This document shows, piece by piece, positions 16,246-54,072 of a stretch of DNA of 55,946 nucleotides. Positions within the stretch are counted from its first letter, which is position 1; every line of letters begins with the position of its first letter. Origin of the DNA: Octopus bimaculoides (taxonomy: Eukaryota); NCBI RefSeq assembly GCF_001194135.2, contig NC_068994.1:2223394-2279339 (forward strand). Direction: 5' to 3'. The translations under genes and the position numbers were made by a program. Under the pieces are notes generated by a model. That model did no database searches and was not told where the DNA came from. It worked only from the letters and a program-made list of their open reading frames with translations.

Positions 16246-16910
16246 GAGAGCGTCCTTACAATTGTTTCTCGTGTGACAAGACATTTGCCCAAAAGGCTCA
16301 CTTGACCATTCATCAACGCACACACTCTGGGGAGAAACCTTTCAACTGTGGCGTATGTGGCAAAAGTTTCCCTCAAAGGGTCCACATGCAGAAGCATGAA
16401 CGCAGTCACAGCAGCGAAGAACTGATGCGTGCCGGTGTCACACTTCATGTACCAACTGTCCGGCAGCAACAGCAACAACCTCCTCCTTTGACACCTTCCC
16501 CTCCTTGTTCAGGGCCAAATTCTTCATCTCCTCTTATGACAAGCTGCAATTGCAACTGTACCTGCAACCTGCTCATGTGCACGCAATGCTCCCCAAATGC
16601 ATCGCCGTCACCAATTCCTATTGCATCTCCATGCAACATGCAAATGAATCAGAGATTGACAACAATTTCTTCAGCATCTATTGCAACAATCTGTCCCCGA
16701 CAGATGTCCGGTCGGTCAGCGTGCGTCACTCCAACTCCTCCGCTTTCTCAGGGCAATCTTTCTCAACAGTCAAACTATTGCACAGCTCGCAGTTACCCTG
16801 GCAACTCCACCAAGTGGAGTAACAACAACAATAGTAGTAATGTCACCATGTGTTTACCTTCCTCTTCATGTGGCAAAAACATGAAACAAAACATGCATCA
16901 AAGAAGTTGA
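16246..16910 (+). CDS. C2H2 zinc-finger protein 1, coding exon 3 (total 453 aa)
   Basis: Acceptor ttgttgcAG at 16244-16245; G+GA restores the TGERPY linker; fingers 6-7 then a Q/P/S/N/C-rich tail; TGA at 16908-16910; summed CDS 1362 nt is a multiple of 3. Confidence 0.92.
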
Positions 16911-21988: not shown

Positions 21989-23528
21989 ATGATATAGCAA
22001 TGGGCAAGGCATGAAGGGCACAACATGAATTCAGTCCCTAACCCTCAATATCTTTCTCACCTTCTCCCGTTTTACATTCATAAATACCCACAACTGACCC
22101 TTTTATTCCGCACTGCTGTTTTCTCACCTTCTCACACATTTCTCACTCTCACTCTCACTCACTCCTTCACTCCACTTCATATTCTTCACCTTCCCTCTCT
22201 CTCTCTTCTCTCTGTTTCTCTCTTCCATCCTTCCTCCTTCTACCATATTTTTCTTACTCTTTCACTCCAATCGTGCCTTTCTTCAATATTTTCATCTCCT
22301 CTTCCTTCTACCATAGTTGACACTCTCCTCTACACATTCTCTCTTTCTCTTTCCCTCTCTATTACTCTTTAACTGCTCTTACTCCAGCCCCCTCTCTTAC
22401 AATTTGCTCTGTAACCCCTCTTATATTCTCTCTTTTCATTCATTTATCCTTCTTCCTCCCTCCCCTTCTTTCTCTCCATCTTTCGCCTTCGCTCTCTTCC
22501 TCTATCCCCCACCCATCTCACTCATTCATGATATTCCTCCTCCTTCACTCTCTTTATCTGCTTTACCATCTCTCTCTCTCTCTCACTCTCACCATCTTTC
22601 TTCCTCCTTTCTCCTTTTCTGACCACCCTCCTTCTCCACACTCTATTCTATCTACAATCCTAGCTTCTATCGTCTGCTTTCTACATTCTCTCTCACCCCC
22701 GTCGCCCCCCCCCTCTCTCTCTCTCTCTAACCCTCGCCATCATCTATCACTTTTTTATTTTCACATCTCGATCGTTTTATGCTTTTACCTCACACTACTA
22801 CTCTCACCAAAAACATTATGCTACCACCTTTTCCTCATTCTCTCATAACATTCCACCACCTTATACTTATCTTTCTCTCTCTCTCTTTTTCCTCCCCTTC
22901 TCATTACATATATAACATTCCATAAACTCTCACCTCTNNNNNNNNNNCCAAAAACATTATGCTACCACCTTTTCCTCATTCTCTCATAACATTCCACGAC
23001 CTTATACTTATCTTTCTCTCTCTCTCTCTCTTTCCTCCCCTTCTCATTACATATATAACATTCCATAAACTCTCACCTCTCTGTCTCTCTCTTCCTTCCT
23101 TTCGTTATTCCACTACCTCATACTTCTTTCTCTCACTATCCCTCCACCTACTCTCTTTTTAATCTCTTCTTTCTACTCCTTTCCCCTCCTCAATTCGCTT
23201 TCCCTACTCCTCTCTACAACAATACCCTCTTCCTTTCTAACAGAATCCCTTTCCTCCCACTTCATTTGTTCCTTCACTTTTACCATTCCTCACTCACCCA
23301 ACGCTACTACTGTTCCACTCTTAATCTTTCTCTTCCTCCCGCTAAACCTCATTTACCCTTACTCCCATTTCCACCACATTTCTTTCTTTCTTTCTCTTTC
23401 CTCCCACTATTTCTCTCTCTTCTAGCCTTTTCCCTTGACCCTTATTCTCTTATTCTCTCTCTCTCTCTTTCTCTCACCGCCACCACCATCATCACCACTA
23501 CTGCTACAGCTGACATCAACAGTCTGAC
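21989..23528 (+). other. 1.5-kb polypyrimidine tract, putative 5' leader exon of ZNF gene 2
   Basis: Acceptor-like t10-cAG at 21987-21988; CT-rich body; donor-like GAC|GTAAGA at 23529. Exon status is inference. Confidence 0.4.
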
Positions 23529-24734
23529 GTAAGAGACCCCGGACAGAGCTACCTACCTCCAGCGAATGTACCCCGAATGGACCGGGTAGACCGAGTAGCC
23601 TTTATCTCAACACATCACTTTAACCGTGCCTCTGTAAGTACATCGACAGACACGAAACAAAGCGACACCATTGCTTTGCTGTTTACTTTTTACACATATT
23701 TCACTCTCACTCTCTCACACACTCTCTATCTATCTCTCTTTCTCTCCTCCCGGAAGGAAATACTCCGTCCTCTCTCCCTCTGTCTCTCACTCACTCCCTC
23801 TCTCTTCGCAATATTTACCTCTCTCATTTCATCACTCTCTTTCTTTCGCCAACACACACACACACACACACACATCATCATCATCACCTCTCTCTCCCTC
23901 TCTCCTATAACATACTCTTTTTCTTTCTTTCTCCCTCTCCTACACTCTGTCCAGCCAAACACAAACCAATGTGTTCAGTACAAACATGAGCCAGTTTTAT
24001 ATGAATTAGCAGCTAAACCTGCCTCAGCTCAGAGACCCTACCGTCTTGAAAAAGAAGGACCATTAGTTAATGTAGTGTTTGGTATAGAAAAAGACGAGGT
24101 GGTCACGGCTGGAAGTCAGAGCTCAGCTGGAGCTATACAACATTACCCTTGCATATTTCACATGCACACCTCGCACGCCTTTCCGATGTCCACTGTCTTG
24201 GCCTGCTAGAAATAGTAGCCAAATCTAGGTTTAAATTACAACCCCTGTTTTATTTTATAAAGGACACACGAAATACTATAGTCTATAATAGTGTTTTAAG
24301 AATAAATGATATGGCCATGGCTGGACCTCTTTGAACATAAATATGCTTGTTTAGGATCGACCTGATGTTAAATAAGAACTACACATTGTATACAACGAGG
24401 GAGCATCTATGTGGTCGTCCGGCCTGCTAGAGATTGCAGCCAAATCTACTTCATATCACACGCTATCGTTCTGGTCATGGATTTAACTGTTTAAAAAAGG
24501 TGGGACGGTCATGGCTGAAATACTTTGGAAAATAGATCAACAGTGACATATTTACATTGGTTGTTGTTGTAACAGACCTTATAATTAAAAGCATTCTAGC
24601 CATGACTCTCGTCTTTTTGTATACATTAGATGACATTAAACAATGTGTCCTTCCTTTTCAAGTGAAATTTGGCTGCTATTTCCAGTAGAGCGACCTCGTA
24701 GCTTCTGTGTCTCTTGTTATTCCTCTGTGAACAT

Positions 24735-26306: not shown

Positions 26307-27839
26307 ATGGAGAAAACCTTCCGGCAAAAACTCCTCGCCAAATACAGTAATCTGAATAACAGAAGTGGGAAAAAGTTCTCCTTTCTCAAGAACTTCTCCT
26401 CCAATTCTTCTGAAAGTACTCCTAAAAAGTTCTCCTTTCTTAAGAGTCCTTCTACAAATTCTTCTGAAAATCCTACAAAAAATGCCAGAGAAAGCAAAGT
26501 AACTTTGCAACGGGCTTTTTTTTGTGACATCTGTGACAAATCATTCTCTCGAAGTAGTTATTACAGCTGGCATAAAATGAACCATTCTCTTGGCGAACCA
26601 GTGCCAAAAATATCACTGAGTAAACGAAAACAGAAACTCTGTACAACCCACAAATGTGATATCTGTGAGAAAGTCTTCTCTAGGTTTGAGTATTTACGAC
26701 TTCACCGACTGAGCCATGTTGAGGAGAAACCATTTTCTTGTGAGACTTGTGGACAGTCATTCATACAAGCTAGTCTGCTAAGAAACCATGAGAAAACTCA
26801 TGCTGATGGCAAAATCTATAAATGTGAAGTTTGTGAAAAAGAATTTTCTAAGAGTTGTGATCTAAAACGCCATCTCAGTGTCCACCTGAGTGTGAAACCA
26901 TTTAAGTGTGAAATTTGCTCTCGCAATTTCTCAAGGAATGACTATTTGAAATCTCATATGCTGAGTCACACAGGCAGCACTCCATTCAAATGTAAAACTT
27001 GTGGGAAAGGATTTGTTCGACGGTTTGCTTTAGAAAACCATGCAAGGACACACACAGGTGAAAAACCCTATGTCTGTAGCATTTGTGGCAAAACTTTCTC
27101 TCAAAAATCAGGCTGGATGTCACACTCAAAGAACCATGTCGACAAAAAGGCTTTTGTATGTCGAGTTTGTGGGAAAGGGTTCACACAGATGTACTCGTTG
27201 AAAAGACATGAACGCACGCATGCTGACAAAAAACCTTACAGTTGTGAATATTGTCAGAAAGAGTTCTCACAGAGTGGACAGCTAAAGTCGCACCTGGCCA
27301 TTCATACAGGAATCAAACCATTCAAATGCGAAGTGTGTGGTAAAAATTTTGCCCAAAAATCCATCTTGACAAAACATGAGCGGATTCATGCTGAAATTAA
27401 ACCGTACAGTTGTGAGGTGTGTGGCAAAGGGTTCACACAGAACTTCACCTTACAGATACATCTGAGGAACCATACAGGGGAGAAACCTTTCTCCTGTACT
27501 TATTGTGATAAGGTATTCTCCCGTAAAGACAGTTTAAATAATCACATCAAGAACCATACAGGTGAGAAAGATTTCTGCTGCAGATATTGTGATTCTGCTT
27601 TCACAAAAAGTTCCACTTTGAAGCGACATGAGATGACACACACTGGGGAACGGCCTTATGTTTGCCAAATTTGTTCCAAGGCTTTTGCAAAGCCAAGCGA
27701 TCTCAACCGTCACATGATTACACATACTGGCGCCAAACCATATACCTGTAATATATGTGGGAAGGCATTTTCTCGTAATGAGCACCTGAAAAAACATGAG
27801 ACTACTCACTCGCTCACTTACCAGCCATGGCTACTCTAA
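26307..27839 (+). CDS. C2H2 zinc-finger protein 2, 510 aa, 15 fingers, uninterrupted CDS
   Basis: Fifteen C-x2-C-x12-H-x3-H motifs, 14 in tandem with TGEKP-type linkers; in-frame stop upstream of the ATG; likely acceptor ttttatcAG at 26080-26081; no KRAB/BTB/ZAD recognisable. Confidence 0.95.
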   Translation: MEKTFRQKLLAKYSNLNNRSGKKFSFLKNFSSNSSESTPKKFSFLKSPSTNSSENPTKNARESKVTLQRAFFCDICDKSFSRSSYYSWHKMNHSLGEPVPKISLSKRKQKLCTTHKCDICEKVFSRFEYLRLHRLSHVEEKPFSCETCGQSFIQASLLRNHEKTHADGKIYKCEVCEKEFSKSCDLKRHLSVHLSVKPFKCEICSRNFSRNDYLKSHMLSHTGSTPFKCKTCGKGFVRRFALENHARTHTGEKPYVCSICGKTFSQKSGWMSHSKNHVDKKAFVCRVCGKGFTQMYSLKRHERTHADKKPYSCEYCQKEFSQSGQLKSHLAIHTGIKPFKCEVCGKNFAQKSILTKHERIHAEIKPYSCEVCGKGFTQNFTLQIHLRNHTGEKPFSCTYCDKVFSRKDSLNNHIKNHTGEKDFCCRYCDSAFTKSSTLKRHEMTHTGERPYVCQICSKAFAKPSDLNRHMITHTGAKPYTCNICGKAFSRNEHLKKHETTHSLTYQPWLL

Positions 27840-29544: not shown

Positions 29545-29885
29545 ATATGGCAGTGAAACATGGGCTGTAACTGCTGAGGACATACGTAAGCTCGCAAGGA
29601 ATGAAGCCAGTATTCTCCGTTGGATGTGTAATGTCAATGTGAATACCCGTCAGAGTGTAAGTATCTTGAGAGAAAAGCTGAACATTAGAAGCATCAGTTG
29701 TGGTGTGCAAGAGAGACGATTGCGCTGGTATGGACATGTGGTGAGAATGGATGAGGATAGCTGCGTGAAAAAGTGCCACACCCTAACAGTTGAGGGAACC
29801 CGTGGAAGAGGTAGGCCCAGGAAGACCTGGGCTGAGGTGGTGAGGCAAGACCTTCGTACATTGGGCCTCACCGAGGCGATGACTA
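29545..29885 (+). mobile_element. RTE-clade LINE, ORF C-terminal fragment (5'-truncated)
   Basis: YGSETW...RRLRWYGHVVRM...RGRGRPRKTW are RTE-clade post-RT motifs; runs into the N gap 29886-30414. Confidence 0.9.
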
Positions 29886-34352: not shown

Positions 34353-34715
34353 TTTCTTCCTCTATCTCTTCCAGAGAATATGTCATGCCTGGGAAAAGCT
34401 GTCTGTTCCCTCAGCCCCGCCCTTCCATTAACTCCACCCCCCACCTCGAATTAATTTTAATGCTATGTGTGTCCATGTGTGCTCTAGTGTTTATGCATGT
34501 ATTTCTTTATGTATATATGTGTGAGTCAATATATTTTTTAAAATTCTTTACAGTACGTGCATTTATGAATAGCAGGGTTGATAGATAGATAGATACATAC
34601 ATATATACATACATGCATATTTACATAGATACATACATATATACATACATGCACATATACATACATAGATACATACATGCATGCACACACACACACATAC
34701 ATGTGGTTGTAAGAC

Positions 34716-34727
34716 TATATATATATA
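34716..34727 (+). promoter_or_regulatory. Possible TATA element of the micro-exon gene
   Basis: TATATATATATA about 60 nt before the ATG at 34784; could also be a plain (TA)n repeat. Confidence 0.35.
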
Positions 34728-34783
34728 GGAGCAAACAGTTGCTGACATACAACACTACAGTTTAAACTCTTCAAGAACACAAG

Positions 34784-34838
34784 ATGAAACTTCTGCTGGT
34801 TGTCACCATTTCTCTCTTCATAGCGCTGGTTGTTGGCA
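34784..34838 (+). CDS. Secreted micro-exon gene, exon 1 (signal peptide MKLLLVVTISLFIALVVG)
   Basis: aagATG context, basic N-region, hydrophobic core, V-x-G cleavage site, then phase-1 consensus donor A|GTAAGT at 34839. Confidence 0.8.
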
Positions 34839-35044
34839 GTAAGTATTATTAAATCTGTCTTCTAATTCTGCTCCTGGTCTGCTTATGCTTTATCTCTGCC
34901 GTTGGTGTACTCGGTCTGTAATTCTGTTACTTGTAACTCAGATGTAACTTTGCTGTATCTCTATATTGTAACATTATTGCAACTCTGTGATATCTCTTTT
35001 CTACTCTTGGCACAAGGCCCCCCAATTTTTTTTTTTTTTGTGGC

Positions 35045-35205
35045 GGGGAAGTTCATTAGATTGACCCTAGTACTTAATTTATCGACCCTGAAAGGATGAC
35101 AGGCAAAGTCGACCTCGGCGGAATTTGAACTCAGAACGTAAACACAGATAAAATACCACTAAGCATTTCGCCTGGCATGCTAACGGTTCTGACAGCTTGC
35201 TGACT
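35045..35205 (-). mobile_element. tRNA-derived SINE head/central part (intronic)
   Basis: gtacttaatttatcgaccc...ggcaaagtcgacctcggcggaatttgaactcagaacgtaa; near-identical to 47250-47480. Confidence 0.85.
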
Positions 35206-35950
35206 TAACTCTGTTATATCTCTGGTGGAACTCTGTAGTAACTGTCGTATATTTGCCATAATGCTAGACATGGATTCAACAAGGATACCAAGAGGTGGAG
35301 TGACAAGCAGGTCAGTGGTGGGAATGCCTCAGAAGTGGAGATATGGGACAAGACAGCTCCAAAGAATAGAGGCCATTGAAGTAGTGATGAAAAGTCAAAG
35401 ACAGGAGCTAGCCCTAGTGGGGTGGGGTCCGGGGATGGAATATGTCTGTTAGTGATTTGATGTTGATTTGTCAAGTGGCCCTCATCTGAATGTGAGTCAC
35501 AATGTCTGTGTGTTCATTGCAATAGAACCATCTCCCAGGTCTTTGCATACATACATGTGTGTGTGCACATGCATGTGTATGTGCGTGTGTGTATGCATGT
35601 GTGTGTAAAATGAGATGACAAGGGAATTAACAAAATCTTATGTGGAATTTGTCTTATAAAATATGCTAATTACTCACAGCTACACATGTATAATATTGTC
35701 TATCTAAACAGTGGTTCTCTCATCAATATTTCAATGTCTACAGTAAAGTCTATGTTTTGCTAAAGAGGCTTAATACAATGGAAAGATGTCAAGAGTTGTC
35801 TCCCAATTAAGCCACTACTAATCTTTCGTCTAATACATTTTTCCTGATGGTCTAATCATTTTTAATTAGCTATGTAAAGTGATTACACAAAGTCTGGCCT
35901 CCCAATTGTTGTCTCTCTCTCTATTAATCTTCTTTTTCCTTTATTTACAG

Positions 35951-35974
35951 CTCCTAATATTGATGACATTAAAT
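35951..35974 (+). CDS. Secreted micro-exon gene, exon 2 (24 nt, phase 1-1, TPNIDDIK)
   Basis: Long polypyrimidine tract + ttacAG; donor GTAAGT at 35975; open in the frame set by exon 1. Confidence 0.75.
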
Positions 35975-36457
35975 GTAAGTTATTTCCTTGACATTGTTCA
36001 ATATTCATAACAATACATATTGATTTCTAACAATAACAGGTAGGGGTGGGGCTCTGAAAGGGGTCTCAGGGAGTAGCGTCTCTGCCTTCCTGAGCTAGTT
36101 TTCCACCACATTTCTTAAAAATAGTGGTAGAGGCCTTCGTCTCGGGACCACTCATGTTTAGAAACTGACGTTGGGGGTTCTTCCTGTAGAAAATCCTGCT
36201 CCAAAAAAGCCTCAAGATAGCAAAGGAGAATGGGCACCAGCCAGCCCAAAGGTTGGGGTGGGCTGCACCTGCCTGCCTCGGTTGCTATGGCATTGAGGAA
36301 GATCCAGCCCCCCCCCACCACCACCACCACCATTAACAGGGACAAAACCCTAACAAGCTGATGCAGGTAGTTTATCCTGTCCCCCTCCGACTTTTAGTTC
36401 ATACAATTGAAAAGAACTGCATTATTTATGGGATGACCCAATATATATAAATATATA

Positions 36458-36458
<1 letters not shown>

Positions 36459-36542
<84 letters not shown>
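36459..36542. repeat. (CA)n microsatellite
   Basis: About 40 CA units. Confidence 0.97.
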
Positions 36543-36547
<5 letters not shown>

Positions 36548-36590
36548 GAGCAATATTCCTACTGACATCAGAGTATTTTTGTTATTTCAG

Positions 36591-36614
36591 TTGATATTGT
36601 TGGAGCTAAAACAG
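36591..36614 (+). CDS. Secreted micro-exon gene, exon 3 (24 nt, phase 1-1, FDIVGAKT)
   Basis: Branch-point-like actgac at 36561, acceptor tttcAG, donor CAG|GTAAGT at 36615. Confidence 0.75.
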
Positions 36615-36820
36615 GTAAGTGATGGATTTCATTCATTTTCCATTGTTCTGTCATTGCCTTAATTATTTTCATCATCATCATTGTCATCATGTAAAAGAAG
36701 AGATGAAGTGATTATATTGCTTATCCTAGCCAAATTCCTGCTTTTGCAACTTGTGTTACACAGCACGCATATATGTGTGCATGTATATATATGTTTGTAT
36801 GTATATATACTTATATATAA

Positions 36821-37507
36821 CAAGAACATAACAGACGATGACAAAAACATACGGATAGATGGATGATACAAAGATGGACAGGAAAACCAGGACGGGACAT
36901 TTGTGGCTTTCTATTCATCAGTTCTATTCACTACAGTTTCAGCCTGTTACACTTGAGACTGTTCAAAACTGGTAGGCCCCAAAAATCCAAGCTAAGGGCA
37001 TTCAATTTTTGGAAGAAAACGGGCGAATATGTGTGACAACATGGACAAAAAAAAAAAAAACAAGAAAATGGAGAAAATATTACAAAATTGCAAATACAAA
37101 AAACAAGAATAACAACAGGTGTCTTTCAACTGAAAGGACAAGTTTAAGATAAGGTGGAGTGTGAACTGGAAGCCTTACGGCAACAAACATAGATGAAAGT
37201 CAGGAGACAGGAAAAGAAAGTGCTGTGCGAGTGGTGGTCAGGCCAAGAAAGAAAGATCATGCTTGGCTGAGCATCGGTCAAGTGGAAGGAACAGAGTCCA
37301 TGTTCTTGTTTTTTTGATCCCTGCTGTTGCACATATTCGCCTGCTTTCTTCCAAAAATTGAATGCCCTTAGCTTGGTTTTTTGGGGGGCCTAGCAGTTTT
37401 GAACAGTCTCAAGTGTAACAGGCCAAAACTGTTGTGATAATTGGAAGCTTGACTGGTTTTCCTGTCCATCTGTCCAGATGTTTTCATTGTCGTCCATTAT
37501 GTTCTTG
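36821..37507. mobile_element. Intronic foldback element (arms ~36821-37040 and ~37325-37507)
   Basis: cctgttacacttgagactgttcaaaact...ccaagctaagggcattcaatttttggaagaaa occurs as an inverted pair. Confidence 0.8.
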
Positions 37508-38259
37508 TTCCAATGGATTCTATTGTCTTAGAAATTATTTTTCTGGCAATGTTTGTCAATTCCACTTCCATCACATGACTCTGTCAGGAAGCAACCACAG
37601 CCCCATTACCTACTGTTCTGTTTAAAGTCCTGCTCAAAGACATATCATGAAAAGAATGCCAGCCATGACCATTCCATCATTAGATCTTGAAATATTCATG
37701 GCTCTACCTATTTCAATCTCTCTCTCAATCACTAGCTGAGCTACTGTGGAGTTGCTCAAAATGCTAGAAATAGCAGCCACCTCTCCCTCAAATCACACAA
37801 TGAAACATCAAATGTGATTCTGGACTCTTTGCACATAAGAAAAAGATAGGATGGTCATGTTTGGAATGCCTTTGATCATAGGTCTGCTCAAAAACGCATG
37901 ACAGCTAACTGAAGCCTATATATGGCCGCTCCACCATCTAGAAATAACAGCCAAATCCCTCTAATATTACACCCTACCATTCTTTAGAGTAGGAAGGAGC
38001 CATTGGATGATGTAATACTAGGTGAACTATGCCTGAAAAAAGACCGATGGCATGGTCCCTGTGGGATTAACTTTGATCAGGACTGACCTAGGGCTAAACT
38101 TTAATAGCAACTAACCGAACCTGAGCCATATTAACTGAGTTATTATCCTTTCTCCCTGTCTGGATTGTTCCGGAACAATTATGGGGAGAGGAGCCCCCTC
38201 CCCCACACTTCCTCATTTGTTTTCTCATTAAATTAATGAATTTATTGATTACTTTGCAG

Positions 38260-38301
38260 CTGCGTCAAGTGGAGGGTCTGCTGGGAAACGAGCATTCAAT
38301 G
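38260..38301 (+). CDS. Secreted micro-exon gene, exon 4 (42 nt, phase 1-1, AASSGGSAGKRAFN)
   Basis: Acceptor actttgcAG, donor ATG|GTAAGT at 38302; encodes Gly-Lys-Arg. Confidence 0.75.
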
Positions 38302-38304
38302 GTA

Positions 38305-38412
38305 AGTAGATACTACCATTACTACTACTATTACCACTATCACTATTACTACTGCTGCTGCTACCACCACTACTACTACTACTACTACTACCATCACCAC
38401 CACCACCACTAT
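38305..38412. repeat. (CTA)n/(CCA)n microsatellite
   Basis: Seen directly. Confidence 0.9.
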
Positions 38413-39157
38413 GAAGTATGACACCTTGCCAGTCGATGAGATGGCCATATTTTCAATGGTGACTTGATATTTGCCTTATAGCAGCAACAGCAACAGTAAT
38501 TCTCTGGGAGTTTCTCCTTTGATCTCTGTTGAGGATTGTTGAGGGCTGAGCTCATTTCTGGCTTTACTTTCCATCCTTCCAGTTTTTGGTAATGTCAATA
38601 TCAAATGTTGTAAATGTTGTTGTTGTTGCTGCTGCTGCTGCTGTTGTTGTTGTTGTTGTTGCTCAACCTCTGTTCAACCCTGATCAGGCGGACTTACTGG
38701 GGGGGTACCCAAAAGTAACCAGAAACGTTCTCTGTGGGACAAACCCATTGTAGTTTCTTGCTCTCTGCAAGATGTAGAAAGGTGACAACTGAGGCATTAA
38801 GAGGCCTCCCTTCACAAGAGTTCCAGGACTGCTTCGAACAGTGGGAAAAGCGTCTGGACTGATGCATGGCTTCAAATGGAGAATACACCAAAGGCAATGA
38901 AAGTGTTGACACGTAAAAGTATGGGAATAAAACCATATTACTAAATTCCAGTTTCTTTTTGGGTACCTCTCATATAAGCAAAATTATCTCACTTGTTCCA
39001 GCCTGGACCATCTCACTTTGTTTAATGTGTCCTTCCTTCTATTGAAGTGTCATTTGCAGAAGATTTAGCTATCATTTCTAGCCTGTCAAGTGACTGTTGT
39101 TGTTGTTGTTGTCACAACTGATGTTATCCTTATAACGATGGCCATTATCTCTTCCAG

Positions 39158-39228
39158 GAGGTCCACCCGTAGGAGGCAGTGGAAACGATTTAAATGCCTT
39201 GAAGACAAAAGAGATGGAACTGGATTAA
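39158..39228 (+). CDS. Secreted micro-exon gene, probable terminal exon (GGPPVGGSGNDLNALKTKEMELD*)
   Basis: Acceptor tctcttccAG at 39156-39157; phase-1 frame open to TAA at 39226-39228; AATAAA near 39501 and 39783. Confidence 0.55.
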
Positions 39229-40109
39229 CTGGCACCATTATTCTTGTTGTTCCTATCACAATGAAGAAATGTTCAAGGAAACATGAACATTCTGCAGACT
39301 TTCACAACTGTCTTGGCTTCCTAAACATTTAAGAAACTTCCTTTAATATTCCTTCCCAATTCTTGCAGTAATCTGGAAGATTCCAGATGTTGTCTACATG
39401 GAAACTTTTAAACTTAATTTCCATGAAAATTCCATTTGTTGATGGCAGAACATTCTGGATGTTTCCAGTTTGATGTTAAAATATAAAGTGCAACCTTCAT
39501 CAATAAAATCTAAATTCTAATGTCTCCATGTTTTACTCTTTATTTGTCATATCATACCATTACAGAAATACATGAGGACCATGTAGACAATATCATAACA
39601 CTATAGAAATATGCATGTGGACGTAAAGATACATGTGACGATGTAGCCAAGAAACCATGTATCCTACAACCAATAGTATACTACAGTAACACATGTAGCC
39701 ATGTCCCCATGTGGTCAACCTAAGCAAAAGAATATGTAGGAAAGATAAGTGAGTTAATTTGTTTATAAATTAATGGAAGCTCAATAAATAAATAAGAGTT
39801 AATAGACATGTTTAATTTAAGAAATTAGGACACAGCAGGTCATGCTACTCCAGACTGATGATGAGCAAAGACTCAGAAACATGTCTCTGGATGCTGGCTT
39901 AGCTGGGTGGAGGTGCTTCTCTCCCCCTTGTAAACATAAGGACACAGGAAATGTGTCAAGGCCAACAGGAAGCAGTGCAGCTTCCTAGGTCTAACCAACA
40001 GTAGTATTATTCCCTTCAGGGGACTGTCACATTAAGTTGACAGCATACAACTACTTCATTGTATTCCCGGAATCATTGGAAATTTTTTTTTTCTTTGAAT
40101 GAATTCCTG

Positions 40110-48113: not shown

Positions 48114-48935
48114 ATGAATATACTCAGGGTAGGGTGCGCTGAAAGTGTAGTTGCTAGAATGAGAATAGCCTGGGCAAAGTTCAGAGAGCTCTTACCTCTG
48201 CTGGTGATAAAGGGCCTCTTGCTCAGAATAAAAGGCAGACTGTATGACGCATGTGTACGAACAGGCATGCTACATGGCAGTGAAACATGGGCCGTGACTG
48301 CTGAGGACATGCGTAAGCTTGCAAGGAATGAAACCAGTATACTCCGATGGATGTGTAATGTCAGTGTGCATACTAGACAGAGTGTAAGTACCTTGAGAGA
48401 AAAGTTGGACCTAAGAAGCATCAGTTGTGGTGTGCAAGAGAGACGATTGCGCTGGTATGGACATGTGGAGAGAATGGATAAGGATAGCTGTGTGAAAAAG
48501 TGCCACACCCTAGCAGTTGGGGGTACCTGTAGAAGAGGTAGGAAGACCTGGGATGAGGTAGTGAAGTACGACCTTCGAACATTGGGCCTCACCGAGGCAA
48601 TAACTAGTGACCAAGACCTTTGGAAATACGCTGTGCATGAGAAGACCCGGCAAGACAAGTGAGACCATAACCCGTGGTGTTTATCTGGTGTGAAGCCAGC
48701 TCACTTAGGCGTACCTTTCCTTCTTTGGACACAAAGCCCTGCTTGCGAAGACCTATTGAGGCAATCAAAACTGAACCAAATTCGATGACTGGCATCCATG
48801 CCAACCTTCCTTCATTGGACACTAAACTCAGCTTGCGAAGACCTGTTGGGGCAAGTGAGGTCAATCGATCGAAACTGAACCAAATTCGATGACTGGCACC
48901 CGTGACAGTGCAGGGGCTAAGAGCACCATCCGAGC
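48114..48935 (+). mobile_element. RTE-clade LINE fragment: ORF C-terminus (to 48662) plus 3' UTR with internal repeat
   Basis: KGRLYDACVR...HGSETW...RRLRWYGHV; closely similar to 29545-29885; UTR has gcttgcgaagacct..aactgaaccaaattcgatgactggca twice. Confidence 0.9.
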
Positions 48936-51165: not shown

Positions 51166-53007
51166 ATGTTCCTGTCATTGTCTATTGCATTATCAGTGGT
51201 CCACTGTGTCTTGACCATAGACCTTACCTACCATGTGGAAGAAGAGAGAAGTCCAGGAACATATGTAGCAGACATTGCTGCTGATTCTAAACTTTTAGAC
51301 AATGTTAAACCATCTGATCAACATTTGATAACATTCAGTCAATTCAAACGAAAGGTGGCACAGTTATTTAATATCACCAAAACAGGTAAACTGTACACTG
51401 CTCAGACATTGGATGCAGAAGATCTTTGTACATTCAACAAAGAATGTTCCAGAACTATGAAAGTTGTTGTCANNNNNNNNNNNNNNNNNNNNNNNNNNNN
51501 NNNNNNNNNNNNNNNNNNNNNNNNNNNNNNNNNNNNNNNNNNNNNNNNNNNNNNNNNNNNNNNNNNNNNNNNNNNNNNNNNNNNNNNNNNNNNNNNNNNN
51601 NNNNNNNNNNNNNNNNNNNNNNNNNNNNNNNNNNNNNNNNNNNNNNNNNNNNNNNNNNNNNNNNNNNNNNNNNNNNNNNNNNNNNNNNNNNNNNNNNNNN
51701 NNNNNNNNTGGATTTCAAAACTCGTTAATACAATATAAATTAAAATCAAAGAATGGAGAACCATTCTCTCTGTCAGTGTCTAAAAGAGCTGATGGTATTT
51801 CTTCTCTTAAAATAGTTTTAAAAGAATCATTGGACAGAGAAATCAAAGACACATATTTATTACAAGTCATAGCTAAGGATGGAGGTTCACCAGCAAAACA
51901 AGGTGTTTTAAATATAAATATTTCCATAATAGATGTTAATGACAACCCACCTGTATTTTCTAAACCTCTCTATAATATATCCATACAAAGTACACATCAC
52001 AAATCTAAACCCATCATTGTTTTATCTGTGACTGATGCTGATTCTGGTGAAAATGGTAAAATTACTTTTCATTTAAGTCCAAAGACATCAGATCTAGCAA
52101 AAAGCTATTTTCTGTTAAATGAAACCAGCGGAAACATTTTCTTAAGGGAATATTCAAATTTAGGGAAAAAGAAAACCTATGAACTATTTATAGAAGCCAG
52201 AGATGGAGGCAGTCCACCCTTTAGTTCTATAGCAACAGTTCTAGTAAATGTTATCAACCAACACAATAATCCTCCATTTATTGATATTCAATATGTCTCA
52301 GCAATCAGTGACAACACAGCTACCATTTTTGAAGACAACAAAATCGGTAGTTTCATTGCTTATGTGATGGTCACTGACAACGATGTGGGACAAAATGGAC
52401 AGGTGAACTGTCATATCAAAGATGACACATTCAAACTACAGTCAATGGGATCTAAAGAATATAAAATCCTTCTAAACAAACCAGTGGACAGAGAAACACA
52501 AGGACACTATAACATTCCTGTCTCCTGTCAAGATAAAGGATTACCTCCTCTGAAAAGTGTTAAAACCCTCTCTATCCAAGTGATGGACATCAATGATGTA
52601 CAACCACAGTTTACCAAAGATACATTCCAATTCTTCACCTATGAAAACAAAGATAAAGACTTCCCTATTGGTTTTGTCAATGCCACTGACCCTGATCTTG
52701 GATCTGCTGGACAACTCACATATTCTCTGCTGCGTAAAGAAAAATCCAATCTACCATTTCTCATCACCAGTTATGGCTTCATTTCAGCCACCATGTCATT
52801 GGACAGAGAGAAACAAGATGTGTATAAGTTTGAGGTTTTTGTCAAAGATAACGGAAGCCCATCTCTGAATGACACAGCGAATGTTGTTGTTGAGATTCTC
52901 GATCAAAATGACAATGCTCCCTATTTTACATATCCTAGTAGTGACCCTTACACCCTAAATGTGCAGTACCATCCGCAGAGTAAGAGTGACATCACAGTTT
53001 TGAGAGC
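51166..53007 (+). CDS. Protocadherin, large ectodomain exon (signal peptide, EC1-EC6 start; gapped)
   Basis: Signal peptide, EC1 DLTYHVEEE, repeated LDRE, A.DGG, D.NDN.P motifs; gaps 51473-51708 and 53008-53885 explain the frame change; acceptor gttttAG at 51108-51109. TM segment presumably lies in the second gap. Confidence 0.93.
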
Positions 53008-54072
53008 NNNNNNNNNNNNNNNNNNNNNNNNNNNNNNNNNNNNNNNNNNNNNNNNNNNNNNNNNNNNNNNNNNNNNNNNNNNNNNNNNNNNNNNNNNNNN
53101 NNNNNNNNNNNNNNNNNNNNNNNNNNNNNNNNNNNNNNNNNNNNNNNNNNNNNNNNNNNNNNNNNNNNNNNNNNNNNNNNNNNNNNNNNNNNNNNNNNNN
53201 NNNNNNNNNNNNNNNNNNNNNNNNNNNNNNNNNNNNNNNNNNNNNNNNNNNNNNNNNNNNNNNNNNNNNNNNNNNNNNNNNNNNNNNNNNNNNNNNNNNN
53301 NNNNNNNNNNNNNNNNNNNNNNNNNNNNNNNNNNNNNNNNNNNNNNNNNNNNNNNNNNNNNNNNNNNNNNNNNNNNNNNNNNNNNNNNNNNNNNNNNNNN
53401 NNNNNNNNNNNNNNNNNNNNNNNNNNNNNNNNNNNNNNNNNNNNNNNNNNNNNNNNNNNNNNNNNNNNNNNNNNNNNNNNNNNNNNNNNNNNNNNNNNNN
53501 NNNNNNNNNNNNNNNNNNNNNNNNNNNNNNNNNNNNNNNNNNNNNNNNNNNNNNNNNNNNNNNNNNNNNNNNNNNNNNNNNNNNNNNNNNNNNNNNNNNN
53601 NNNNNNNNNNNNNNNNNNNNNNNNNNNNNNNNNNNNNNNNNNNNNNNNNNNNNNNNNNNNNNNNNNNNNNNNNNNNNNNNNNNNNNNNNNNNNNNNNNNN
53701 NNNNNNNNNNNNNNNNNNNNNNNNNNNNNNNNNNNNNNNNNNNNNNNNNNNNNNNNNNNNNNNNNNNNNNNNNNNNNNNNNNNNNNNNNNNNNNNNNNNN
53801 NNNNNNNNNNNNNNNNNNNNNNNNNNNNNNNNNNNNNNNNNNNNNNNNNNNNNNNNNNNNNNNNNNNNNNNNNNNNNNNNNNNNNTAAGTGAAAACATTA
53901 TAATATTTTCTCTTTCTTCACTGTATATGTAAAAAAGGAACAATGAAATCTCTTTGAATATGTTTTAACTTCAATAATACATTCCAATATTAAATTGTTC
54001 TCTGTCCATGTTGATTGTAACTTCCATTGTTTGGTGTCTCCTCACATTTCTTTATCATTGGTTTGTCAACAG

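What the first reader, a model, noticed from the sequence alone, without database searches (positions are those of the whole stretch)
34784..39228. Hidden micro-exon gene encoding a small secreted peptide precursor
Seen: a signal-peptide exon and three tiny exons (24, 24, 42 nt), each with a canonical acceptor and a perfect GTAAGT donor, all phase 1-1 and multiples of 3, then a plausible terminal exon and AATAAA. Spliced product, 71 aa: MKLLLVVTISLFIALVVG-TPNIDDIK-FDIVGAKT-AASSGGSAGKRAFN-GGPPVGGSGNDLNALKTKEMELD. Four consensus donors in one open frame behind a signal peptide are unlikely to be chance. The layout parallels schistosome micro-exon genes, where symmetric exon skipping yields families of secreted variants (established). 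Inference: a cephalopod micro-exon secretory system giving up to 8 in-frame isoforms, with junction residues that change on skipping. It is absent from the ORF track and I recognise no homolog.
Basis: partly seen in the sequence, partly recalled or inferred. Interest (0 to 1): 0.92.

Follow-up and report, generated by a model that had tools for sequence, protein, structure and literature searches.

The report
Annotated octopus small secreted-peptide gene

Summary
Observation confirmed to the base. Exons 34784-34838, 35951-35974, 36591-36614, 38260-38301 and 39158-39228 (+) have YAG acceptors and four GTAAGT donors.

The gene is not hidden. The product is 100% identical over its full length to UniProt A0A0L8GYS9 (Octopus bimaculoides, uncharacterised). 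It is 89% identical to a 71-aa O. vulgaris protein whose colinear locus has the same five exons.

Evidence that it is coding:
- Codons 1-35 differ by 6 synonymous and 0 non-synonymous changes (P~3e-4).
- The TATA run and the AATAAA signal are conserved.
- Chains of three or more such micro-exons arose in 3 of 400 simulated sequences.

The micro-exon-gene (MEG) analogy is weak:
- Three micro-exons make up 42% of the CDS.
- No paralog was found in the window or the ortholog locus, and no relative outside Octopus in the protein libraries.
- No skip isoform is on record.
- Micro-exons 2-3 are the most constrained part.
- The E2-E5 junction makes TGA, so 7 isoforms reach the normal stop, not 8.

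Best reading: a constitutively spliced, Octopus-restricted gene for a small acidic, disordered secreted peptide, possibly cleaved at the conserved K44-R45. I saw no transcript data. Interest is low to moderate.

The parts
34716..34727 (+). TATA-like run (TATATATATATA), 57-68 nt upstream of the ATG; putative core promoter
   Evidence: Read. The surrounding 'aagactatatatatatagga..cagttgctgacatacaacac' is nearly identical in O. vulgaris. There is no upstream ATG between it and the start codon. Promoter function is inferred.
34784..34838 (+). Exon 1 coding part (55 nt): ATG with A at -3, then the 18-aa signal peptide MKLLLVVTISLFIALVVG, ending in phase 1; donor GCA|GTAAGT
   Evidence: The O. vulgaris copy differs at 5 bases, all synonymous third positions. 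AlphaFold puts a helix at residues 3-17.
34839..35950 (+). Intron 1 (1112 nt), phase 1; holds a SINE-like element at about 35010-35200
   Evidence: 89.5% identical to O. vulgaris intron 1, with indels.
35951..35974 (+). Micro-exon 2 (24 nt, phase 1-1), encodes (T)PNIDDIK; acceptor ttatttacag, donor GTAAGT
   Evidence: identical in O. vulgaris.
35975..36590 (+). Intron 2 (616 nt; 2589 nt in O. vulgaris), holds a (CA)n microsatellite
36591..36614 (+). Micro-exon 3 (24 nt, phase 1-1), encodes (F)DIVGAKT; donor CAG|GTAAGT
   Evidence: One synonymous difference in O. vulgaris, where the donor is GTGAGT.
36615..38259 (+). Intron 3 (1645 nt), holds a foldback element at 36819-37509
38260..38301 (+). 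Small exon 4 (42 nt, phase 1-1), encodes (A)ASSGGSAGKRAFN, including the dibasic K44-R45; donor GTAAGT
   Evidence: Two non-synonymous differences in O. vulgaris (A36V, G43E); K44-R45 is kept.
38302..39157 (+). Intron 4 (856 nt), holds trinucleotide repeats and a mariner-like remnant
39158..39228 (+). Exon 5 coding part (71 nt): (G)GPPVGGSGNDLNALKTKEMELD plus the TAA stop
   Evidence: Ten base differences from O. vulgaris, changing 6 of its 23 residues: the fastest-evolving part.
39229..39507 (+). Putative 3' UTR up to the first AATAAA (39502-39507)
   Evidence: the AATAAA and the 35 nt after it are identical in O. vulgaris (L001 16644). The UTR aligns at about 89%. The poly(A) site itself is inferred.

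Best explanation
This is a genuine, already annotated, Octopus-restricted protein-coding gene (UniProt A0A0L8GYS9 in O. bimaculoides) of about 4.8 kb. It has five exons, three of them very small (24, 24 and 42 nt).

Proposed mechanism:
1. Transcription starts about 30 nt downstream of a conserved TATA run.
2. Four phase-1 introns are removed. The micro-exons are too short for ordinary exon definition, so they are recognised through donors perfectly complementary to U1 (GTAAGT) and pyrimidine-rich CAG acceptors. This suggests constitutive inclusion.
3. The resulting mRNA of about 0.55 kb is translated from ATG 34784 into a 71-aa precursor.
4. An 18-aa signal peptide, encoded exactly by exon 1, takes the precursor into the ER and is cut after Gly18.
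5. What is released is a 53-aa, cysteine-free, acidic (pI about 5), Gly/Ser/Ala-rich and largely disordered secreted peptide.
6. A conserved dibasic site (K44-R45) probably lets a prohormone convertase split it. The N-terminal peptide (24-25 aa) has an invariant first 16 residues, TPNIDDIKFDIVGAKT, and is the likely functional core. The C-terminal peptide (26 aa) evolves fast.

Shown here: the exon structure, the identity to public gene models, orthology, and purifying selection on the reading frame. Inferred: transcription, splicing efficiency, signal-peptide cleavage, cleavage at K44-R45, and any bioactivity.
For: Structure:
- Exons, splice sites and ORF were verified.
- The 71-aa product is 100% identical, over 100% of its length, to A0A0L8GYS9_OCTBM. 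It is 89% identical to the 71-aa O. vulgaris CAI9733520.1.
- The O. vulgaris locus is colinear in its flanks and introns. It has the same five exons with AG and GT(A/G)AGT sites.

Selection:
- Codons 1-35 show 6 synonymous and 0 non-synonymous changes, all at third positions. The chance of this under neutrality is about 3e-4.
- dN/dS is 0.27 for the whole CDS and 0.72 for codons 36-71. The excess of synonymous changes over the whole CDS has P=0.017.
- There are no indels in any exon, but many in the introns.

Gene signals and chance:
- The TATA run, the A at -3, the absence of an upstream ATG, and the AATAAA at 39502 are present, and the TATA run and AATAAA are conserved.
- The chain of symmetric micro-exons is rare by chance: 3 of 400 simulations.
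- No further candidate micro-exons lie in the introns.

Product:
- Signal-peptide features: n-region MK, a 15-residue hydrophobic core (GRAVY 2.53), and V at -3 with G at -1.
- AlphaFold gives helix 3-17, a disordered middle with pLDDT around 50, and a weak helix at 59-70.
- K44-R45 is conserved.
Against: - I could inspect no transcript or peptide evidence. The exact protein is not on record in the assembly and Logan gene index. A spliced-junction pattern found nothing in the metagenome contigs.
- The two public gene models are not independent. The O. vulgaris annotation aligned the O. bimaculoides UniProt proteome to the genome (PMC10700109). The O. vulgaris gene range on record equals the CDS only, so it may lack transcript-derived UTRs.
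- The two species are close: introns are 80-90% identical. The selection signal therefore rests on only 18 substitutions.
- The Gly before K44-R45 that would donate an amide is Glu in O. vulgaris. This argues against a classical amidated neuropeptide.
- No match to any Pfam family, and no relative outside Octopus, so the function has no homology support.
Confidence: 0.8

Rival explanations
1. One reading: a schistosome-MEG-like system. Because all internal exons are symmetric (phase 1-1, multiples of 3), regulated skipping would produce a set of secreted peptide variants with altered junction residues.
For: - The layout resembles MEGs: a signal-peptide exon, small symmetric internal exons, introns much longer than the exons, and a small, disordered, lineage-restricted product (MEG description in PMC4350168 and bioRxiv 10.1101/2023.06.21.545858).
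- Six skip combinations stay in frame to the normal stop in both species.
- The C-terminal half evolves quickly (dN/dS 0.72).
Against: - There are only 3 micro-exons, 90 of 213 coding nt (42%). In MEGs 'most of the coding region' lies in 10-20 tiny exons.
- No paralog in the window or in 26 kb of the O. vulgaris locus. No relative beyond the Octopus pair among 5.8 billion clusters or 1.84 billion representatives.
- None of the 13 in-frame skip isoforms of the two species exists in the collection of about 15 billion proteins.
- All internal exons have consensus-strength sites. Such sites are typical of constitutive micro-exons (established knowledge, applied here by inference).
- Micro-exons 2-3 encode the invariant part of the peptide (0 non-synonymous changes). 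That is the opposite of a diversification cassette.
- The E2-E5 junction gives a stop.
- No paper links micro-exon genes to octopus or other cephalopods.
Confidence: 0.08
2. It is not a functional gene. It would be a chance arrangement of splice-like motifs that an ab initio predictor called in O. bimaculoides, later copied into O. vulgaris by protein-to-genome alignment. The locus would be non-coding or untranscribed.
For: - I saw no transcript evidence.
- The two annotations are not independent.
- Exon identity at the base level (86-100%) is not clearly above intron identity (80-90%).
- There is no homolog outside the genus.
Against: - Six of six substitutions in codons 1-35 are synonymous third-position changes (P about 3e-4).
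- All eight splice dinucleotides, the TATA run and the poly(A) signal are conserved, and the exons have no indels.
- A chain of three or more such exons is rare in simulations, 3 of 400. That count does not even require an ATG, a signal peptide, a compatible terminal exon or a poly(A) signal.
Confidence: 0.07
3. The hydrophobic N-terminus is an uncleaved signal anchor. The product would then be a tiny type II membrane microprotein rather than a secreted peptide.
For: The hydrophobic stretch L3-V17 is predicted helical. No signal-peptide predictor was available.
Against: - The hydrophobic core is only 15 residues, short for a membrane span.
- It is followed by V-V-G, which fits the -3/-1 rule for signal peptidase.
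- The exon 1 boundary falls, in phase 1, exactly at the predicted cleavage site. This is usual for secretory signal-peptide exons (established knowledge).
Confidence: 0.04

Closest known systems
[quoted passage not shown] 2010, as described in PMC4350168 and bioRxiv 10.1101/2023.06.21.545858)
   Same: - The first exon encodes a signal peptide.
- The internal exons are tiny and symmetric (multiples of 3, same phase) and are separated by much longer introns.
- The product is small, secreted, disordered and lineage-restricted.
- Skipping would in principle keep the reading frame.
   Different: - Three micro-exons (24, 24, 42 nt; 42% of the CDS), against 10-20 exons making up most of the CDS.
- No paralog found, against 25 families and 35 genes.
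- No sequence similarity to MEGs, and no evidence of alternative splicing.
- The micro-exon-encoded part is the conserved part, not the variable one.
- One skip junction creates a stop.
- The host is a free-living mollusc, whereas MEGs 'appear to be restricted to platyhelminths' (PMC4350168).
Small neuropeptide or peptide-hormone precursors of molluscs (signal peptide, then peptide, dibasic site, spacer)
   Same: - A short precursor (71 aa) with a cleavable signal peptide.
- A single conserved Lys-Arg site.
- A conserved peptide next to a fast-evolving remainder.
- Gly-Lys-Arg in O. bimaculoides, which could give a C-terminal amide.
   Different: - The amidation Gly is Glu in O. vulgaris.
- There are no repeated peptide copies and no cysteines.
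- No similarity to any Pfam family or to any protein outside Octopus.
- No expression or peptidomic data. A vague likeness of the C-terminal peptide (NGG...DL..L) to molluscan cerebrin/PDF-type peptides is recalled from memory only and was not tested.
Neuronal microexon programme of bilaterians (3-27 nt exons regulated by SRRM-type factors; e.g. PMC8797185)
   Same: The exon size (24 nt), and the dependence of such exons on strong splice signals.
   Different: Those microexons are single alternative cassettes inside large conserved intracellular proteins. Here the micro-exons build the core of a tiny secreted peptide, and there is no sign of regulation.
Phase 1-1 exons of extracellular and secreted proteins, and phase-1 introns after signal peptides (established knowledge, Patthy and co-workers)
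   Same: The signal-peptide exon ends in phase 1, and all internal exons are 1-1. This is the commonest phase class in genes for secreted proteins, so the symmetry does not by itself point to a special mechanism.
   Different: The exons here are far smaller than typical 1-1 domain modules and encode no folded domain.

Membership tests
Schistosome-type micro-exon gene (MEG) | The product starts with a signal peptide encoded by a conventional 5' exon | tested here: met
   Exon 1 encodes MKLLLVVTISLFIALVVG: n-region MK, a 15-residue hydrophobic core, and V at -3 with G at -1. It is predicted helical. No SignalP was run.
Schistosome-type micro-exon gene (MEG) | Internal exons are very small and symmetric (length a multiple of 3, same phase at both ends) | tested here: met
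   24, 24 and 42 nt, all phase 1-1.
Schistosome-type micro-exon gene (MEG) | Most of the coding region is made of such micro-exons (typically 10-20 of them) | tested here: not met
   3 micro-exons, 90 of 213 coding nt (42%). No further candidates lie in the introns. Definition from PMC4350168 and bioRxiv 10.1101/2023.06.21.545858.
Schistosome-type micro-exon gene (MEG) | Member of a multigene family, or sequence-related to known MEG families | tested here: not met
   Only the O. bimaculoides / O. vulgaris ortholog pair was found. No paralog in the window or in L001. Unannotated paralogs elsewhere in the genome could not be searched.
Schistosome-type micro-exon gene (MEG) | Alternative splicing (exon skipping) yields protein variants | tested here: inconclusive
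   None of the 13 in-frame skip isoforms of the two species is in the collection of about 15 billion proteins. That collection is a poor proxy for RNA data. The E2-E5 junction gives TGA.
Schistosome-type micro-exon gene (MEG) | Expression in secretory glands or epithelia exposed to the environment | not testable with these tools
   No expression data were available.
Neuropeptide / prohormone precursor | N-terminal signal peptide and a small precursor | tested here: met
Neuropeptide / prohormone precursor | Conserved basic cleavage site(s) flanking a conserved peptide | tested here: met
   K44-R45 is conserved. Residues 19-35 are invariant with synonymous changes only. Only two close species were compared.
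Neuropeptide / prohormone precursor | Conserved C-terminal Gly as amide donor (for amidated peptides) | tested here: not met
   G43 in O. bimaculoides is E43 in O. vulgaris.
Neuropeptide / prohormone precursor | Homology to a described peptide family | tested here: not met
   Pfam gave 0 families at E<=10. The exhaustive HMMER search gave only the Octopus cluster plus three repeat proteins that match residues 9-40, dismissed as spurious.
Neuropeptide / prohormone precursor | Neuronal or endocrine expression, and detection of the processed peptides | not testable with these tools
   No transcriptome or peptidome data were accessible. No paper cites the accessions.
Functional protein-coding gene (general) | Reading frame, splice sites and regulatory signals conserved in an ortholog, with purifying selection | tested here: met
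   the same 5 exons, all splice dinucleotides kept, dN/dS 0.27 overall and 0 for codons 1-35.
Functional protein-coding gene (general) | Spliced transcript observed | not testable with these tools
   Searches found nothing. The public models were made with RNA evidence in the pipeline, but support for this particular gene is unknown.

The most novel reading that the evidence does not exclude
This octopus gene would be the first micro-exon-gene-like locus outside flatworms. Regulated skipping of its three symmetric micro-exons would generate up to seven secreted peptide variants (plus one truncated form), perhaps as one of several unannotated genes of this kind in cephalopod genomes.
Probability: 0.07. 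Interest if true: 0.65.

Novelty: already known. Interest (0 to 1): 0.2.

Why it matters
As it stands, little. The gene model has been public since the O. bimaculoides annotation, and the architecture (a signal-peptide exon followed by small phase 1-1 exons) is ordinary for secreted products.

It has modest value in three ways:
- It is a clean example of an Octopus-restricted orphan secreted peptide whose N-terminal 16 mature residues are under strict constraint. That makes it a candidate signalling peptide worth an in situ and peptidomic look.
- It shows that 24-nt coding exons can be read from raw sequence when the donors are perfect.
- If transcript data were to show regulated skipping, or a family of such genes, it would extend the micro-exon-gene strategy beyond platyhelminths.

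Tried and rejected
- **Relatives.** The word-indexed search, Pfam and the exhaustive HMMER search with a two-sequence profile found only the Octopus pair. Three weak hits are long repeat proteins with a motif of the type 'SLVAGTGDSDNxKFQIVG'. It aligns across the signal peptide and mature N-terminus (residues 14-37 of P0001 against P0003), so I rejected them as spurious.
- **Skip isoforms by exact look-up.** Two O. bimaculoides isoforms were mistyped, and one other entry there wrongly read through the E2-E5 TGA. I recomputed all isoforms by script and queried again. All were absent.
- **Transcript evidence.** Exact-protein contig look-up for P0001 found nothing on record. A scan of metagenome contigs with a pattern spanning two exon junctions gave 0 hits, which is expected and uninformative.
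- **Paralogs and hidden exons.** tblastn and blastn-short of the exons against the window and L001 gave self hits only. A relaxed scan for extra conserved symmetric micro-exons in the introns found none. The other 21 GTAAGT sites on the + strand are not preceded by plausible micro-exons.
- **Flanking-intron conservation** as a mark of alternative exons: no clear signal at this divergence.
- **Structured RNA** in the region: no Rfam hit.
- **Structure prediction:** low confidence and disordered, so I ran no fold search.
- **Literature.** No paper links micro-exon genes with cephalopods or octopus, and none cites the protein accessions. DeMarco 2010 and Albertin 2015 are not held in the library.
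- **Cerebrin/PDF-like reading** of the C-terminal peptide: considered from memory only and dropped as unconvincing.


Full report
**1. Observation**

I read window 34600-39500 and extracted the five proposed exons by script.

| Exon | Coordinates | Length | Acceptor | Donor |
|---|---|---|---|---|
| 1 | 34784-34838 | 55 nt | (starts at ATG; context acaagATGa, A at -3) | GCA\|GTAAGT |
| 2 | 35951-35974 | 24 nt | ...ttatttacag | GTAAGT |
| 3 | 36591-36614 | 24 nt | ...gttatttcag | GTAAGT |
| 4 | 38260-38301 | 42 nt | ...tactttgcag | GTAAGT |
| 5 | 39158-39228 | 71 nt | ...tctcttccag | (ends in TAA) |

- Joined, the exons give 216 nt.
- All four introns are phase 1.
- An AATAAA sits at 39502. A TATA run lies at 34716-34727, 57-68 nt before the ATG, with no intervening ATG.

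**2. Is it more than chance?**

- The window holds 25 GTAAGT on the + strand and 10 on the - strand.
- I looked for exons of 6-63 nt with a length that is a multiple of three, open in frame, with a YAG acceptor and a polypyrimidine tract. The only GTAAGT sites preceded by one are the four of this gene. One of those four candidates is a spurious 15-nt sub-exon that reuses exon 1's donor. The - strand has none.
- In 400 second-order Markov simulations of the window the mean was 1.5 candidates. A chain of three or more within 3 kb spacing occurred 3 times, and a chain of four never. This does not yet require the ATG, signal peptide, terminal exon, TATA or poly(A) signal.
- The other GTAAGT sites are not preceded by credible micro-exons.

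**3. The gene is not hidden**

- The 71-aa product is 100% identical over 100% of its length to UniProt A0A0L8GYS9, 'Uncharacterized protein', Octopus bimaculoides.
- It is 89% identical to a 71-aa 'hypothetical predicted protein' of O. vulgaris, CAI9733520.1 / A0AA36FCW8.
- The window is therefore O. bimaculoides DNA. This fits its neighbours: a 13-finger C2H2 zinc-finger ORF at 26307-27839 and a protocadherin-type ORF at 51166-53932.

**4. The ortholog**

The O. vulgaris locus (L001, OX597827.1) is colinear with the window through flanks and introns.

- It has the same five exons at L001 10001-10055, 11203-11226, 13816-13839, 15358-15399 and 16325-16395.
- All acceptor AGs are kept. The donors are GTAAGT, except GTGAGT after exon 3.
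- Introns are 1112/616/1645/856 nt in O. bimaculoides and 1147/2589/1518/925 nt in O. vulgaris.
- The species are close: introns are 80-90% identical and exons 86-100%. Base identity alone says little, although no exon has an indel while the introns have many.

The pattern of substitutions is what informs:

| Region | Synonymous | Non-synonymous | dN/dS |
|---|---|---|---|
| Codons 1-35 (exons 1-3) | 6, all third positions | 0 | 0 (P about 3e-4 under neutrality) |
| Codons 36-71 | about 3.5 | about 8.5 | 0.72 |
| Whole CDS | 9.5 | 8.5 | 0.27 |

- The two halves differ significantly (Fisher P = 0.0015).
- The excess of synonymous changes over the whole CDS has binomial P = 0.017.
- The TATA region, and the AATAAA with its downstream 35 nt, are also conserved.
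- This evidence is independent of any annotation pipeline.

Caveat: the two public models are not independent of each other. The O. vulgaris annotation aligned the O. bimaculoides UniProt proteome to the genome as one line of evidence (PMC10700109). The gene range on record there equals the CDS.

**5. What the product looks like**

- Residues 1-18 have the three regions of a cleavable signal peptide: MK, then a 15-residue hydrophobic core with GRAVY 2.53, then V-V-G. The predicted cut after G18 coincides with the exon 1/2 junction.
- The 53-aa remainder has no cysteine and is 42% Gly, Ser, Ala and Pro. Its pI is 5.1 (4.6 in O. vulgaris).
- AlphaFold predicts it as disordered apart from a weak C-terminal helix at 59-70. 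Mean pLDDT is 60.7.
- A single dibasic site, K44-R45, is conserved. The preceding Gly43, a potential amide donor, is Glu in O. vulgaris.
- The invariant stretch TPNIDDIKFDIVGAKT (exons 2-3) is the likely functional core. The C-terminal 26 residues change at 6 positions between the two species.
- Pfam finds nothing.
- An exhaustive HMMER search of 1.84 billion representatives finds only the Octopus cluster. It also gives three long repeat proteins whose repeated motif aligns with residues 9-40, across the signal-peptide boundary; I regard these as spurious.

**6. Mechanism proposed**

A TATA promoter drives a pre-mRNA of about 4.8 kb. Four phase-1 introns are removed. Exons of 24 nt cannot be defined by the usual cross-exon contacts, so they depend on very strong sites: perfect U1 complementarity at GTAAGT and a Y-tract with CAG. 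This follows from established knowledge of micro-exon splicing, applied here by inference. It accounts for the 'four perfect donors' without invoking regulation, and if anything argues for constitutive inclusion.

The mRNA of about 0.55 kb gives a prepropeptide. The prepropeptide enters the ER, loses its signal peptide and is secreted. It is probably cleaved at K44-R45 into a conserved N-terminal peptide and a variable C-terminal peptide.

- Shown: structure, orthology and selection.
- Inferred: transcription, cleavage, secretion and bioactivity.

**7. The MEG analogy**

According to PMC4350168 and bioRxiv 10.1101/2023.06.21.545858, schistosome MEGs have these features:
- a signal peptide;
- most of the coding region in very small symmetric exons (10-20 exons of 6-81 bp);
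- membership of some 25 families;
- alternative splicing that yields protein variants;
- accelerated evolution;
- apparent restriction to platyhelminths.

Here the signal peptide and the symmetry are met. The rest is not:
- Only three micro-exons make up 42% of the CDS, and no further ones hide in the introns.
- There is no paralog in the window or in the 26-kb ortholog locus, and no relative in the protein libraries.
- None of the 13 in-frame skip isoforms of the two species is present among about 15 billion proteins. This is a weak test.
- The residues encoded by micro-exons 2-3 are the conserved, not the variable, part.
- Joining exon 2 to exon 5 gives T+GA = TGA in both species, so the count of '8 in-frame isoforms' is 7.
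- Phase-1 introns after signal peptides and 1-1 exons are the commonest arrangement in genes for secreted proteins (established knowledge). The symmetry is therefore not diagnostic.
- No paper in the library links micro-exon genes with cephalopods or mentions these accessions.

**8. Verdict**

The gene is real with high probability, but its model is already public. The interpretation as a secreted small-peptide precursor is supported by sequence features. The MEG-like isoform system is an untested analogy, and several tested features speak against it. Function remains unknown. My best guess is a lineage-restricted secreted signalling-type peptide. I could not examine transcript data, and that is the decisive missing step.

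Noticed in passing
window 26307-27839 (+); also 13322-13750 and 16302-16910 (+): A 510-aa single-ORF C2H2 zinc-finger protein with 13 fingers. Two shorter ORFs with C2H2 fingers may be exons of another zinc-finger gene. This fits the known C2H2 expansion in octopus.
   Followed up: partly
window 51166-53932 (+): A protocadherin-type ORF (Cadherin_2 N-terminal domain plus at least 4 cadherin repeats) interrupted by runs of N, i.e. assembly gaps. It is apparently a single large exon, as in the octopus protocadherin expansion.
   Followed up: partly
window 29547-29885 and 48274-48606: Two copies, about 88% identical, of a retroelement-like ORF (…SETWAVTAEDxRKLARNExSILRWMCNV…RLRWYGHVxRMD…). Each contains a GTAAGT. 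No Pfam hit.
   Followed up: partly
window about 35010-35200 (intron 1); L001 11767-11896: A SINE-like element after a T-run in intron 1. It is shared with O. vulgaris, which carries a second, 80% identical copy in its longer intron 2.
   Followed up: no
window 36819-37509 (intron 3): A foldback element of about 690 bp. Its arms are about 245 nt long and 80-90% complementary, around a loop of about 240 nt. O. vulgaris appears to have only one arm at the orthologous place, so this is an inverted duplication or a loss since the species split.
   Followed up: partly
window about 38705-38972 (intron 4): A short mariner-like remnant with terminal inverted repeats GGTACCCAAAAG. Its internal reading frame ends like a mariner transposase C-terminus (…EALRGLPSQEFQDCFEQWEKRLD*). 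It is present in both species.
   Followed up: partly
window 22001-24000: A strongly strand-biased, pyrimidine-rich stretch (GC skew -0.75, AT skew -0.33) that includes a 141-bp tandem duplication at 22803-23081.
   Followed up: no
window 38310-38415 and 38617-38665 (intron 4); 36458-36545 (intron 2): Trinucleotide repeats, (ACT/ACC)n and (TGT/TGC)n, on either side of a unique stretch in intron 4, and a long (CA)n in intron 2. These are ordinary microsatellites.
   Followed up: no
L001 10001-16395 (O. vulgaris gene record): The annotated gene range equals the CDS exactly, with no UTRs. That annotation pipeline adds UTRs from transcript assemblies, so this model may rest on protein alignment or ab initio prediction rather than on transcripts.
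   Followed up: no
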